From Mizuhopecten yessoensis (lineage: Eukaryota): DNA of 64,000 nt. The position numbers and the translations under genes were made by a program. Location: positions 1,175,144 through 1,239,143 of the forward strand of contig NW_018408922.1 of the NCBI RefSeq assembly GCF_002113885.1, in the 5' to 3' direction. This document shows positions 29,035-45,644 of the stretch, piece after piece. Every line of letters starts with the position of its first letter. Positions within the stretch are counted from its first letter, which is position 1. Under the pieces are notes generated by a model. That model was not told where the DNA came from. It was given only the letters and a program-made list of their open reading frames with translations, and made no database searches.

Positions 29035-30153
29035 ATGAGTTTGATTCAAGAAATAGGGCATCTTTATCATGACTTCAATATTTCAAACGCTTACACTACT
29101 CTTGATGCACGTGAACAGTTACGAACGCGTCAGATCAATGCACGTGAGGATAAGCAGCTCGGAAAGTTTACAGAGGTCATAGACAAAGCCAAGGATATAT
29201 GCAAACGGAGACGAGAATGGGAGGAAGATACTTTGCGGAGGCAGTTAAAAGTTTTACAGATGAAAACCCCTTCGCTAGATCGCGGTTTAAGACAAGAGAC
29301 TGAGCGACTCAGACGTTACGAAACGTCGATGATGTCACGAAACAGCTCATCCGGGTTACGAATGCAATCACGGGTGACAAATTTCTCGGAGAAGGCAACG
29401 TTGTATAACCAACAGTGGCCATCCCATACTATGACACCATTGCCACCATCTTCTAGGTGTGGTCGCGGAGGAGAATCTCGTAGGACGTTCACGAGTAGTA
29501 GGGAGTCTAACAACTCCGGAAGTACCTCACGCCCTGATTATAATACAGAAAACCAGGTCAACTTCATGAAAAGAGCAGAAAATGTAACAAAGGAACTCCA
29601 CAAACTCTATAGGCGACAAAAAGAGCGGAGGTCTTCAAATCAACATTTGTTAAACCTCATCAGAATTAATAACAAGGAACTTCTCATGAAAGCTAGAATA
29701 TTCTTCAAAGACGAAGAGGCTACTGCTGTTTTGGAATCAATTCTTTCTGGTGATAGTTCTAAACATGTTGAACAAAACGGTGTTAAATTCCATAGGGATG
29801 CCACGTCATCATCTTATAGTGAAAATGAAAATAACGATATGATAACATCAGTGAACACATACCATGACCCTACAACAGCCATACGAAGGGATTCAACAAG
29901 GGACCCTAGCGTGATGCCATTGCGAGAGGATGTCTCTGACACTGAATCGGGACCCGTATCCTCCACTGTTGCTAACGCTTCTGATCCTGATTCCATGGTC
30001 ATACGGGGTCGGACTAAATGGACAGAAATATTCAAAACACCAGAACTCTGGAAAATGTATACAGCCGATAGCAATGCAAGAAAAAACAAGAAAGATCCCG
30101 TTTCGTCACTTGTCACTATCACAGCTAGATACAGAAGGACTATGGTCAGATGA
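29035..30153 (+). CDS. Intronless 372-aa protein with N-terminal coiled coil (CCDC190-like motif) and disordered S/R-rich region
   Basis: Clean 1.1-kb ORF with AAAAATGA start context. aa 35-79 align without gaps to aa 18-62 of the 44988-45644 protein. Candidate 5'UTR intron 27028-28504 (AAG|GTGGGT ... CTATTTCAG|). Confidence 0.88.
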   Translation: MSLIQEIGHLYHDFNISNAYTTLDAREQLRTRQINAREDKQLGKFTEVIDKAKDICKRRREWEEDTLRRQLKVLQMKTPSLDRGLRQETERLRRYETSMMSRNSSSGLRMQSRVTNFSEKATLYNQQWPSHTMTPLPPSSRCGRGGESRRTFTSSRESNNSGSTSRPDYNTENQVNFMKRAENVTKELHKLYRRQKERRSSNQHLLNLIRINNKELLMKARIFFKDEEATAVLESILSGDSSKHVEQNGVKFHRDATSSSYSENENNDMITSVNTYHDPTTAIRRDSTRDPSVMPLREDVSDTESGPVSSTVANASDPDSMVIRGRTKWTEIFKTPELWKMYTADSNARKNKKDPVSSLVTITARYRRTMVR

Positions 30154-30655
30154 ATGTTTGATTGATAGATTGCTTGCCTAAAATTTGAGAAATTCATGTC
30201 TGATTTCATGACAATCGCCCGGATGTTAACGAGGATCACATGAACGTTTGAATTTAACATGTACATGGTTCGGCAAATGTTTGAATTATTGGTGGTCAGG
30301 TGAATGTTTTAATTTCTGGTTGTCATGCCAACGTTTGGGATACATTAGCAGTCAGGAGAAATTTTGAGTAAGTGCAGGTTATATACATGTTTGAGTTATT
30401 GATTGTTAACTGAAAGACATCAAAATAATGTATTATTGATGGTCAGGTGAGTGTTCAAGTTACTAATGGTTGGCTTAAGTGTTGATGATCACGTGAAGAC
30501 TTTATTAAAAGAAGACATCTAAATAATTGAGTTATTGATAAACAAGCGAATGTGTATACGGAAATTTGCTTGCGTACTTAACCTAATAATAGTGAGATGA
30601 ATTTGTATATTCTGAACACATTTAGTATTGTATTGATGGTCATCGAAAGGTTTTG
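30141..30655 (+). repeat. Degenerate ~27-bp repeat array starting at the stop codon of the 29035 gene
   Basis: Recurring approximate unit TTATTGATGGTCAGGTGAATGTTTGAG near 30141, 30231, 30262, 30287, 30434 and 30631. Confidence 0.65.
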
Positions 30656-32014
30656 GGTGTCTTGCTTGCCAATGGAATGACTGACTATAGCTAACAATGA
30701 CAGGGAAAACGTTGATGTATCTATAAACAGGAGAATTATTTTAATCTACGTGATAGAAGCTAGGTATATGCGTGAGCAACTGGTCTAAGGGTAACTTTGG
30801 CTACGTAAAAAGTGACATACATTTAAAAACTAACGCTGTTTTTGACAAAGGTGGGACATAGGAAATTAGTAATGGTTGCTTTTCATATGTTTTTTCCCCA
30901 AAAAAATACTCACTCTTAAATATAACATTGCGGATGTAACCGCTTCAAAACGGACATATTCTCCTTAGTCACGAATCAACTTACAGGTAAATGATGTGCA
31001 TATAGCTTGCCAATGGATACGTGATCGACTTCAGATTGGATGTTTCACTTTCTGTTTGTTTTGTGGATGTTTCAGTATGTAGAGAAATTATAGGTTAGTA
31101 AGTTTGTTCATTATGCTTAACTTACACTTCCCATTTCATAACATAGAACATGACCCGTTTTACTTAAGGAGATATGATTGATATACACGTATTATCACTT
31201 TTTGTCATAAGAACAGTAGACAGTGAACGAATAGTGAATAGGACACTAGTTTCGTTTGCATTGAGAAAGAGCAGTCACATGGTCAGAGATGCAATATTAG
31301 TACAAAATCTAGTAAAAAAGTCAGCTTAAACCAAACTTTTGTCAGTCATGTCACCGCGTAAACGTTTTGAAACCCGGTATTAATAGATATTGATAAATTC
31401 TATTTTTTTCTGTTTAATCTTATTGATGTTTATTCTGGTGAAATACAACATTTTTTTCAATCAGTATTATAACTCATGTCCCAAATATCTATTAAAGTAT
31501 TTTCAAATCAACTAAGTTTAAAAATTAACATATCTCATGGGAAATAAAAGAAACTACATTTGAATTTTTTTCCTTGTCATTTTATGGAGTTTTAAAGCAT
31601 TACTATAGATGTATGTACATTTTGTTGAAGCTAAAGTAGCATTCGACATTAAGTTTATGCACTACAAATACTCCAATTCTATCCATGAGAAATTGGTTCA
31701 TTTGTACAGTATGTAACTTTTGAGAAAGGTTTTCAGTATAATTTCCGACGGATGAAAAGCAAGATTCTGACATATAAAAACAAAACCGCAAAAAGTTGAA
31801 TGCAGCTGAAATACAGTTACGTTCTTTAGGGAAACGAGGATTGAATCTAAAAACAGCTTGTGTTTTGGAAGAGGAAATATTTTTTACAAGAAAGCTAAAT
31901 ATTTCGAAAAAACGTCCTTTGCAATCGATCGATAACATTCATGCATTTTGATACATGTAATATAACATGTTATACTTATTCAAACCACTTAAATATAAAT
32001 ACGCCTAGCAATAA

Positions 32015-43830: not shown

Positions 43831-44987
43831 TTGTGCATTTTATACAAAAGTTAGAGTTTTCTGCGTTTTCTTCTACATGTATATGTCTGCAATAGGCTCA
43901 TCAAGTAAAAATAAAGTTCATGACATAAATAATTTATATGCTAAAAAAAAAAAGTTTCTTCATTACCTAAATACGTGTCTGCAATAAGGATATATATTTA
44001 TAAACTTATGTTTCTTGCATGTTACATGTGTTAATGTGTGTTTTACCGAATATTCAAAAGTACATGTAATCACGGAAGTCATTTTGATTTCTTTATCGTG
44101 ACTTTCATAAAGGAATTTTGAAATATTTAATTTTCATTATTGAAACATGTAGTTCCGTTTGTCATTGAAGTTAATGATGTATGTTCACTAATTTGATAAA
44201 AAAAATTAAATACATGTTCAGGTAAATTGAATAATTTATTCACATAAGAAACGAATTCATAACGCTAAATGAAAAAGTTACATCTATAAAGCACTTTTGG
44301 GTATATTAAAAGCAAATTTATATCTTATAACATTGTATCCTGATTTTAAGCGGTTATGGACAAATTCAAGGCATAATACACTACACATTGATTTTCCTTA
44401 CGCGTTTGAAATAATTCCCATCACAAGTACAATGTAACAGGCTGTCAGCATCACACTTCATAGACGAATAAAAAGCAATGCGAGGAAAGTCTAAATCATC
44501 ATCCAGCTTTTAGAATAAAATTATAGCGAACTTGTATGACATCCGAGTCACGCATTTCATCCGCAGGTCGACAGTTGCGTAGTGAGTTCCTTTTATCTGG
44601 CATGTATCTGTTTTAATAAGTTACACCAATGTGTTATGAGTTATGATGTTACCGTTGAATTACACATCTTTCTGTAAGCACACTTCAACACAACATTTTT
44701 TCTTTATAAAAGAGAAATTTGACTTGTAAATCTATCATTGCACATTGGAGAATATTGCACACAATTTGAACAGGGGACGCCATTTCACTGAAAGTTTTCA
44801 CAATAATGTTCCACAGAAAAAAATATCCATCCAAATACATAGTTAAAAAGATTTCAAAAACTCTCCATAACGACAGGTAATCAATTATACCGATTTCCGA
44901 ATAATCCTGTTTAAGTGTGGTTGAAATACGTTGTCTATTAAGAACACAAACTTCCGTTTATAAAACATCACACAGAACAAACTCGAT

Positions 44988-45644
44988 TTACAACATAGCG
45001 GTTTTGGGTCGTTTTTTAACGAAGGGTCCGGATGTGTGTTGGTGCACGCGAGGCCTTGCAACTGTCGTCACCGGTCTGTGCATGACGTCAATCTTTGGTT
45101 TCTGCACGTGAAACAGATTTGGCTTGACTATCCAGTGACGAGAGCCTTTTTGTGACCTGAGATTGTCCAGTGCTATGTGATGACTTCTCACGGCCTCCAT
45201 CCGCCTACTGGTCTGATACGGAAGGAGCACACGTCGGCCCTTTTTGGCCTCGCTATTAGGGTAACATATAGCTTCCGTTCCCACCACGTCTATCACGGGG
45301 GCCACTTTAATTCTCTCCGCCTGAAGTTTCGCTTTGCCTCCGATGGACGTAGGTTTCGTGGCAAAAAGTTTAGCGTCGATTTTGACTTCCCCGAGACTGA
45401 TGGTGTTAGTGTCGGGGGTGTCATCCGTGTTGTTGTCGTCTGCTGAGGGTTGGTACCGAGGTGTCCGGACATTTATCTGGACCAATTCGTCCAGAAGGTT
45501 GTACTTTTCTTGCCACATCTTTGTAATCGCCTTACGCTGCTGAGTTTCTAGTCTCACCTCCTTTTCTCGAAGTCTGTACTCATTACGACGGTTAGAAAAC
45601 ATGGCGTTGAAGTATTTCATTTTTGAAACTGTTGCCGTCGTCAT
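44988..45644 (-). CDS. Intronless 218-aa basic protein with N-terminal coiled coil (CCDC190-like motif)
   Basis: Clean ORF with CAAAATGA start context. Shares a gapless 45-aa motif with the 29035 protein. RPVT and RPKTA motifs. Candidate 5'UTR intron 46067-46360 on the minus strand (GG|GTAAGC ... TTTCAG|). Confidence 0.8.
   Translation of the reverse strand: MTTATVSKMKYFNAMFSNRRNEYRLREKEVRLETQQRKAITKMWQEKYNLLDELVQINVRTPRYQPSADDNNTDDTPDTNTISLGEVKIDAKLFATKPTSIGGKAKLQAERIKVAPVIDVVGTEAICYPNSEAKKGRRVLLPYQTSRRMEAVRSHHIALDNLRSQKGSRHWIVKPNLFHVQKPKIDVMHRPVTTVARPRVHQHTSGPFVKKRPKTAML

What the first reader, a model, noticed from the sequence alone, without database searches (positions are those of the whole stretch)
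29035..45644. Two convergent intronless orphan genes share a hidden gapless 45-aa coiled-coil module (CCDC190-like)
Seen in the sequence: aa 35-79 of the 372-aa protein (NAREDKQLGKFTEVIDKAKDICKRRREWEEDTLRRQLKVLQMKTP) and aa 18-62 of the 218-aa protein (NRRNEYRLREKEVRLETQQRKAITKMWQEKYNLLDELVQINVRTP) align with no gaps. The pattern is N-x-R-x4-L-x6-[IL]-[DE]-x12-E-x3-L-x3-L-x2-[LI]-x2-[KR]-T-P, with a Trp next to the central Glu in both. The rest of the two proteins is unrelated. From memory, the L..L..WE...L...L..L register matches the N-terminus of vertebrate CCDC190. Inference: these are ancient paralogues kept about 15 kb apart, defining an undescribed module family and possibly heterodimerising.
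Basis: partly seen in the sequence, partly recalled or inferred. Interest (0 to 1): 0.8.

Follow-up and report, generated by a model that had tools for sequence, protein, structure and literature searches.

The report
Two mollusc genes share helix module
Two neighbouring scallop genes of unknown function are real, conserved mollusc genes whose first long helix probably descends from one ancestral ~50-residue module; the evidence is moderate, nothing links them to vertebrate CCDC190, and no function is known.

Summary
Both ORFs exist as described: A at 29035-30153 (+), 372 aa, and B at 44988-45644 (-), 218 aa. They are convergent and each has a single coding exon. Both are real genes under purifying selection (dN/dS 0.14 and 0.06) and are single-copy in this 988-Mb genome.

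They are not orphans. A has orthologues in scallops, pearl oysters, oysters and a unionid mussel. B occurs in bivalves and gastropods.

The quoted 45-aa alignment is not significant as a pair: 8/45 identities and BLOSUM62 score 17, against a mean of 24.5 for shuffles. Family profiles tell a different story. hhalign aligns A35-84 with B18-67 without gaps (P 0.006-0.023), while 12 control region pairs give P 0.14-0.52. Most of the signal is an I-N-x-[KR]-T-P-S motif that ends a long AlphaFold2-predicted helix in both proteins. An invariant Asn lies 43 residues upstream of it.

The evidence is moderate only: hhalign probability is 6% at most and HMM-versus-sequence scores are weak.

Pfam's CC190 model matches neither family. 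The adjacency is not conserved in Potamilus. A was not detected in RNA-like runs that hold B. I put a real shared module at about 0.6.

The parts
29035..30153 (+). Gene A: single-exon CDS of 372 aa, belonging to a bivalve-wide family with no Pfam domain
   Evidence: ORF. Orthologues have 69-76% identity in Pecten, Ylistrum and Argopecten, and 32-46% in Pinctada, oysters and Potamilus. dN/dS is 0.14 against Pecten maximus. Single copy in G000.
29137..29286 (+). Module in A, aa 35-84: N-A-R-E...L42...[IL]49-D50...E63...L71..I74-N-L-R-T78-P79-S-L
   Evidence: Profile scans. hhalign Viterbi path A35-84/B18-67. The AlphaFold2 helix 16-77 ends just before T78-P79.
30022..30150 (+). Conserved C-terminal block of family A (KWTEIF..PELW..Y...LVTITARYRRTxVR), absent from B
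   Evidence: Alignments A1 and A3. AlphaFold2 helices 329-369 at low confidence.
44988..45644 (-). Gene B: single-exon CDS of 218 aa, belonging to a mollusc family (bivalves and gastropods) with no Pfam domain
   Evidence: ORF. 21 relatives in the exhaustive search, named members in Potamilus, Magallana, Babylonia and Littorina. dN/dS is 0.057 against L001. Single copy. Held by RNA-like runs.
45444..45593 (-). Module in B, aa 18-67: N-[KR]-R...L25...[IL]32-[DE]33...W44-x-[ED]46-K47...L50...L54..I57-N-V-R-T61-P62
   Evidence: Same analyses as for the A module. The AlphaFold2 helix 3-58 (pLDDT about 90) ends just before R60-T61-P62.
45141..45308 (-). Second conserved unit of family B, aa 113-168 (PVIxVxGTxAxCYPNxEAKxGR followed by a helix), absent from A
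   Evidence: Alignment A2. AlphaFold2 gives three strands 117-140 and helix 143-168 at pLDDT 84-90. No significant fold match.
46130..46408 (-). Conserved non-coding block upstream of B, a candidate promoter or 5' UTR
   Evidence: 76% identical to L001:17-296, the contig carrying the 82%-identical B orthologue. The sequence between this block and the CDS does not align.

Best explanation
A and B are two real, single-copy, single-exon protein-coding genes. They belong to two different mollusc-restricted families of unknown function.

Each protein starts with one long charged amphipathic helix: about residues 16-77 in A and 3-58 in B. In both, the helix ends at a conserved [IL]-N-[LV]-[KR]-T-P-S motif, and an invariant Asn lies 43 residues upstream of the Pro. 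The two families align over this stretch without gaps (A35-84 to B18-67). The most likely reading is an ancient duplication of an N-terminal helical module, after which the tails diverged completely. A kept a second helical region and a PELW...LVTITARYRRT C-terminus. B kept a small beta-beta-beta-alpha unit.

A occurs in Pteriomorphia and Unionida, and B also occurs in gastropods. If a duplication happened, it predates at least the split between pteriomorph and unionid bivalves.

Inferred, not shown: the helix is a coiled-coil or partner-binding element, with hydrophobic positions spaced 3-4 residues apart and a conserved acidic residue in the hydrophobic stripe. The Thr-Pro acts as the helix stop and may be a proline-directed phosphorylation site. 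The different tails would give the two proteins different partners.
For: Gene reality:
- ORFs; orthologues.
- dN/dS is 0.057 for B and 0.14 for A.
- Both are single copy.
- B is held by 14 small RNA-like contig sets. Three of these lay nothing on 4.5 kb around A, so they are not genomic DNA.

Shared module:
- It scores 19.1 with all scallop rows removed, and 27.5 for oyster-only A against gastropod-only B.
- None of 3,000 hydrophobic-class-preserving column shuffles reaches it (maximum 11.1).
- In a full-length scan without scallop rows it is the best of 57,072 windows (20.0, next diagonal -0.6). Chance pairwise matches scoring 24-29 fall to between -13 and -34. The regression z is 4.6.
- The motif A74-80/B57-63 is the best of 77,592 seven-column windows (17.4, next 12.2, reversed control 11.3).
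- With the register fixed by the motif, the 39 upstream helix columns score +2.1 against a null of -14.9 +/- 6.0 (P 0.003). Shift 0 is the best of 31 shifts.
- hhalign module pairs score 16.2-18.6 (P 0.006-0.023) and always align A35-80/84 with B18-63/67. The 12 control region pairs score 7.7-11.5.
- HMMER independently starts its weak cross-alignments at the same register.
- AlphaFold2 ends both long helices at the motif.
Against: - The pairwise similarity is no better than chance.
- hhalign probability is only 0.3% for full-length profiles and 2-6% for N-terminal profiles. 1% of shuffled alignments reach its score.
- HMM-versus-sequence cross scores are near noise: the A HMM scores B at a mean of 2.9 bits against 1.7 for reversed sequences, and the B HMM scores A at 1.9 against 1.8.
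- All profile signal sits in columns that already match in the scallop pair. The other 25 columns and both flanks carry none (P 0.81).
- About 18 of about 20 score units come from one seven-residue motif. By my rough tail extrapolation, that motif alone would be expected by chance about 0.05-0.15 times in this comparison.
- No bridging paralogue exists in this genome.
- The profiles are shallow (Neff about 2-4.6).
- The function and the binding role of the helix are inference only.
Confidence: 0.6

Rival explanations
1. Chance resemblance. Two unrelated, highly charged N-terminal helices happen to share a short helix-ending motif and a few Leu, Arg and Asn positions. There is no common ancestry and no shared function.
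For: - The pairwise score is below the shuffle mean, and BLASTP reports nothing.
- hhalign probability is 6% at most, and 1% of shuffles reach the score.
- HMM-versus-sequence scores are close to those of reversed decoys.
- The finding was picked by eye from a very large scan, so some such coincidences are expected.
Against: - The matching columns are exactly the most conserved columns of both families.
- Comparable chance matches between conserved regions collapse at profile level, and this one does not.
- The register is the global optimum in profiles that contain no scallop sequence.
- Two of the ten best seven-column windows lie on this one diagonal.
- The upstream helix is significant once the register is anchored on the motif (P 0.003).
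- The 12 control region pairs score far lower in hhalign.
Confidence: 0.25
2. Convergence on a short linear motif. Both families independently acquired an [IL]-N-x-[KR]-T-P-S helix stop or phosphorylation site because they use the same kinase or docking partner. The helices themselves are not homologous.
For: The motif carries about 90% of the profile score and is the only part in which hhalign's posterior alignment is confident. S/T-P sites commonly arise convergently (general knowledge).
Against: - An invariant Asn lies at the same distance (43 residues) upstream in both families.
- The Leu at +7, the [IL]-[DE] at +14/15 and the acidic residue at +28 also coincide. This gives P 0.003 for the helix alone and makes shift 0 the best of 31.
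- The alignment needs no gap over 50 columns.
Confidence: 0.12
3. Both genes are divergent invertebrate members of the vertebrate CCDC190 family, as the first reader suggested from memory.
For: No tool result supports it.
Against: - Pfam PF15768 (CC190, 270 positions, cut-off 27 bits) gives no hit at E <= 10 for 11 A members.
- It gives no hit at E <= 0.1 for 13 B-family members.
- In a six-frame search of the genome its only match (E 3.97, 16.4 bits) is on another contig.
- The Trp in the claimed register is neither aligned between A and B nor conserved in A.
Confidence: 0.03

Closest known systems
CCDC190 (Pfam PF15768, CC190)
   Same: A small protein with an N-terminal helical or coiled-coil region and a disordered tail. 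No function has been established; the 42 papers that mention it include it only in gene lists, judging from the 10 listed.
   Different: No detectable sequence relationship to either family or either locus. The A and B families were found only in molluscs.
Taxonomically restricted single-exon gene families with coiled-coil N-termini and disordered tails (a general class, not a curated family)
   Same: No Pfam domain, a single coding exon, a long charged helix plus low-complexity Ser/Arg-rich tails, and restriction to one phylum.
   Different: Here two such families appear linked by a specific gapless module of about 50 residues with an invariant Asn and an I-N-x-[KR]-T-P-S helix end. I found this module in no library: Pfam, PDB sequences, Foldseek against PDB, or the ESM Atlas.

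Membership tests
CCDC190 (Pfam PF15768 CC190) | Match to the CC190 profile at or above its 27-bit gathering score | tested here: not met
   No CC190 hit for 11 A members at E <= 10 or for 13 B-family members at E <= 0.1. A six-frame search of G000 gives only a 16.4-bit match at E 3.97 on contig C76728, not at A or B.
CCDC190 (Pfam PF15768 CC190) | Remote profile-profile similarity of the N-terminal helix to CC190 | not testable with these tools
Proposed A/B shared N-terminal module (undescribed) | Invariant Asn, then Arg at +2 and Leu at +7 | tested here: met
   N35/N18 are invariant in all 16 A and 20 B sequences. R37 has frequency 1.0 and R20 0.62; L42 1.0 and L25 0.82.
Proposed A/B shared N-terminal module (undescribed) | [IL]-N-[LV]-[KR]-T-P-S motif ending the helix, with Pro 44 residues after the Asn (43 residues between them) | tested here: met
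   A74-80 and B57-63 form the top seven-column window of 77,592. The spacing is identical and no gaps are needed. The AlphaFold2 helices end at K77 in A and N58 in B.
Proposed A/B shared N-terminal module (undescribed) | Statistically significant profile-profile similarity between the two families | tested here: inconclusive
   hhalign gives P 0.006-0.023 but probability of 6% at most. The gapless profile scan gives P below 1/3000. HMM-versus-sequence scores are near noise. There is no signal outside the already-matched columns.
Dimeric coiled coil | Long helix with heptad-like hydrophobic spacing that forms an oligomer | tested here: inconclusive
   Single long helices are predicted at pLDDT about 76-94, and hydrophobic columns recur every 3-4 residues. 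Oligomerisation and A-B pairing could not be modelled with the tools available.

The most novel reading that the evidence does not exclude
The ~50-residue stretch Asn...I-N-x-[KR]-T-P-S is an undescribed, mollusc-wide protein module that arose before bivalves and gastropods split. It now heads two single-copy gene families, and its conserved Thr-Pro acts as a regulated phospho-switch at the end of a partner-binding helix.
Probability: 0.3. Interest if true: 0.4.

Novelty: new member of a known kind. Interest (0 to 1): 0.3.

Why it matters
If the module is real, it links two uncharacterised, conserved mollusc gene families. It also gives a defined ~50-residue element (an invariant Asn plus a Thr-Pro helix end) that can be tested directly by mutation, interaction assays and phosphoproteomics in oysters or scallops.

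It is also a useful methods case. A similarity invisible to BLAST, and poorly rated by hhalign, becomes the clear optimum once orthologue profiles are used.

The finding does not touch a long-standing question. No function, phenotype or link to a vertebrate family is shown, so its value is modest and mainly in annotation.

Tried and rejected
1. BLASTP of A against B does not report the proposed alignment.
2. Pfam on both proteins and on 11 A and 13 B-family members gives no meaningful family and no CC190 hit.
3. The ESM Atlas look-alike searches for A and B gave nothing usable.
4. Foldseek against PDB for both AlphaFold2 models gave no match at E <= 0.001. The best rows are short helix matches.
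5. hmmsearch of PDB sequences with A3, A2 and the combined module A6 gave nothing significant. The best was an eIF3A helix at E 0.044.
6. Searches of the whole genome with A-only, B-only and combined module profiles find only the two known loci plus noise at E > 1.
7. Metagenome scans failed for two alignments that were too variable to search. The two scans that ran found no relatives.
8. No partner gene lies within +/-10 kb around A in Pecten maximus, Ostrea edulis and Potamilus, or around B in Potamilus and two unnamed ENA assemblies (scanned). The Pecten result is uninformative because the scallop spacing is 14.8 kb.
9. P0035 (3,914 aa) hit B94-129 but is a Calx-beta/Ig-repeat protein, so I rejected it as spurious.
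10. I checked whether P0037 and the long gastropod proteins bridge to family A. They carry no A-like features outside the module.
11. TE or viral origin is rejected. Both genes are single-copy, conserved and under purifying selection.
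Full report
**The observation**

They are convergent, and their stop codons are about 14.8 kb apart.

The proposed gapless alignment of A35-79 with B18-62 has 8 identities in 45 positions and a BLOSUM62 sum of 17. BLASTP of the two proteins does not report it. Shuffled versions of the two proteins give a best 45-residue window of 24.5 +/- 5.4. 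The real pair contains another, meaningless register that scores 29. As a pairwise observation it is therefore no more than chance.

The 'Trp next to the central Glu' is offset by one position between the two proteins. It is also not conserved in family A.

**Are these real genes, and are they orphans?**

A has full-length relatives in several bivalves:
- Pecten maximus, Ylistrum balloti and Argopecten irradians (69-76% identity)
- Pinctada imbricata
- Ostrea edulis and Saccostrea
- the unionid Potamilus streckersoni

B had only one close relative in the word-indexed search. The exhaustive search found 21. These include proteins from Potamilus and Magallana gigas, and long proteins (540-928 aa) from the gastropods Babylonia areolata and Littorina saxatilis. 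In related ENA-derived members of this long-protein cluster, B's N-terminal helix and its second motif are separated by a long insertion.

B against its 82%-identical orthologue gives dN/dS 0.057, with dS near saturation. A against Pecten maximus gives 0.14. Each family has a single locus in the 987.6-Mb genome. In every species fetched, the coding sequence is one exon. An oyster contig carrying A is collinear with the genome.

So both are real, conserved, single-exon genes of mollusc-restricted families, not orphans. None has a Pfam domain.

From the orthologue identities the genome is a pectinid. Its size and contig count match my memory of the Mizuhopecten yessoensis assembly, but that identification is inference.

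**Is the shared module real?**

First, the N/R/L/E/T-P positions are conserved in both families. Asn35 and Asn18 are invariant in 16 A and 20 B sequences. Leu42/Leu25 and Thr-Pro are nearly invariant.

Second, I ran a gapless profile-profile scan of the N-terminal alignments.
- It scores 19.1 when every scallop sequence is removed from both profiles.
- It scores 27.5 for oyster-only A against gastropod-only B.
- None of 3,000 column shuffles that keep hydrophobic and polar columns in place reaches it (maximum 11.1).
- The reversed B profile gives 6.8.

I then scanned the full-length proteins with scallop-free profiles. This register is the best of 57,072 windows (20.0, next diagonal -0.6). Chance pairwise matches scoring 24-29 collapse to between -13 and -34. 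Comparable matches between conserved regions average -25.

hhalign on N-terminal alignments gives a gapless Viterbi path of A35-84 to B18-67, with score 16.2-18.6 and P 0.006-0.023. The 12 control pairs of other conserved or helical regions of the same proteins score 7.7-11.5 (P 0.14-0.52). Reversed profiles score 13.2-13.7.

**Where the signal lies, and the caveats**

About 18 of the roughly 20 score units come from seven columns, [IL]-N-[LV]-[KR]-T-P-S (A74-80, B57-63). Oyster A reads INLRTPSL and gastropod B reads INVRTPSP. This is the best of 77,592 seven-column windows (17.4, next 12.2).

With the register fixed by that motif, the 39 upstream helix columns score +2.1 against a null of -14.9 +/- 6.0 (P 0.003). 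Shift 0 is the best of 31 shifts.

Several results argue for caution:
- hhalign's calibrated probability is only 0.3% for full-length profiles and 2-6% for N-terminal profiles. 1% of shuffled alignments reach its score.
- HMM-versus-sequence cross scores are close to those of reversed decoys, although HMMER picks the same register.
- Columns that do not already match in the scallop pair, and both flanks, carry no signal.
- No bridging paralogue or third family exists in this genome.
- The metagenome scans were blank.

Weighing these, I put a real shared module at about 0.6, chance at about 0.25, and convergence on a short motif at about 0.12.

**Structure and likely mechanism**

AlphaFold2 with the family alignments gives A the following features:
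- a long helix at 16-77 (pLDDT 76-94) that stops just before T78-P79
- a second helix at 81-102
- a helical region at 171-238
- low-confidence C-terminal helices

B has a helix at 3-58 (pLDDT about 90) that stops just before R60-T61-P62. It also has a small, confident three-strand-plus-helix unit at 117-168. The rest of both proteins is predicted to be disordered.

Neither Foldseek against PDB, PDB sequence profiles nor the ESM Atlas gave a relative.

What is shown is a common architecture: an N-terminal charged amphipathic helix that ends at the shared motif. What is inferred is its role. The helix would be a coiled-coil or partner-binding element, the Thr-Pro a helix stop and possible proline-directed phosphosite, and the unrelated tails would give different partners.

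**The other claims**

- **CCDC190.** PF15768 is indeed Pfam's CC190 model. It matches no member of either family, and its only match in the genome (E 3.97) is on another contig. CCDC190 itself is uncharacterised in the searchable literature. A remote profile-profile comparison could not be run because no tool supplied a CCDC190 sequence.
- **Linkage.** In Potamilus, A is on scaffold JAEAOA010000897.1 and B is on JAEAOA010002223.1. Each lies more than 1 Mb from a scaffold end, so the adjacency is not conserved there. No partner lies within 10 kb in the other loci fetched. For Pecten this is uninformative, given the 14.8-kb spacing in the scallop.
- **Heterodimerisation and co-expression.** Fourteen small, RNA-like contig sets hold 77-87% of B's sampled words, and four similar runs hold none. 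Three B-holding runs and one non-holder laid no contig on 4.5 kb around A. This shows they are not genomic DNA, so B is transcribed. It also gives no sign that A is co-expressed. The tool warns that such blanks can be false and that 'RNA' is a guess for these runs.

**Verdict**

The sequences and the alignment are as described, but the pairwise similarity is not significant. The underlying idea of a shared N-terminal module survives independent orthologue-based tests with moderate support.

The CCDC190 label, the 'orphan' label, the conserved-linkage claim and the heterodimer idea are not supported. The case is a probable ancient paralogy between two uncharacterised mollusc gene families. It is a useful annotation lead of modest general interest.

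Noticed in passing
window 43485-43799 (-), 56222-57085 (-), 57412-57897 (-): These are retrotransposon remnants. The 104-aa ORF between genes A and B is 39.5% identical (E 8e-21) to part of the 287-aa ORF at 56222-57085. That ORF has a sub-threshold zf-RVT match (21.3 bits against a 27.5-bit cut-off), and the neighbouring ORF at 57412-57897 matches RVT_1.
   Followed up: partly
window 16612-18402 (+): A third long single-exon ORF (596 aa, charged and Ser-rich) with no Pfam domain lies 10.6 kb upstream of A. The module profile does not match it. Its conservation was not examined.
   Followed up: no
window 3339-4976 (+): A 545-aa single-exon ORF with an N-terminal hydrophobic stretch has a weak, sub-threshold LCAT (lipase/acyltransferase) match at E 7.7e-4, 19.2 bits against a 21-bit cut-off.
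   Followed up: partly
window 46130-46408: A non-coding block about 500 bp upstream of B's start codon is 76% identical to the matching position in the contig that carries the B orthologue. The sequence between the block and the CDS does not align. It may be a conserved promoter or 5' UTR element.
   Followed up: no
ENA-derived proteins P0040-P0042, in the same 90% cluster as P0032; P0032 is one of five long B-family hits (P0029-P0033) that include the named gastropod proteins from Babylonia and Littorina: These members of the long-protein B-family cluster (652-684 aa) carry B's N-terminal helix and its second motif (PVI..GT.A.CYPN..) separated by an insertion of about 350 residues. The two conserved units of B therefore behave as separable modules. 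The named gastropod proteins themselves were not printed by that check.
   Followed up: partly
window 9184-9563 and 19737-20365: Tandem repeats with periods of about 147-148 bp and 52/201 bp, probably satellite or TE-derived.
   Followed up: no
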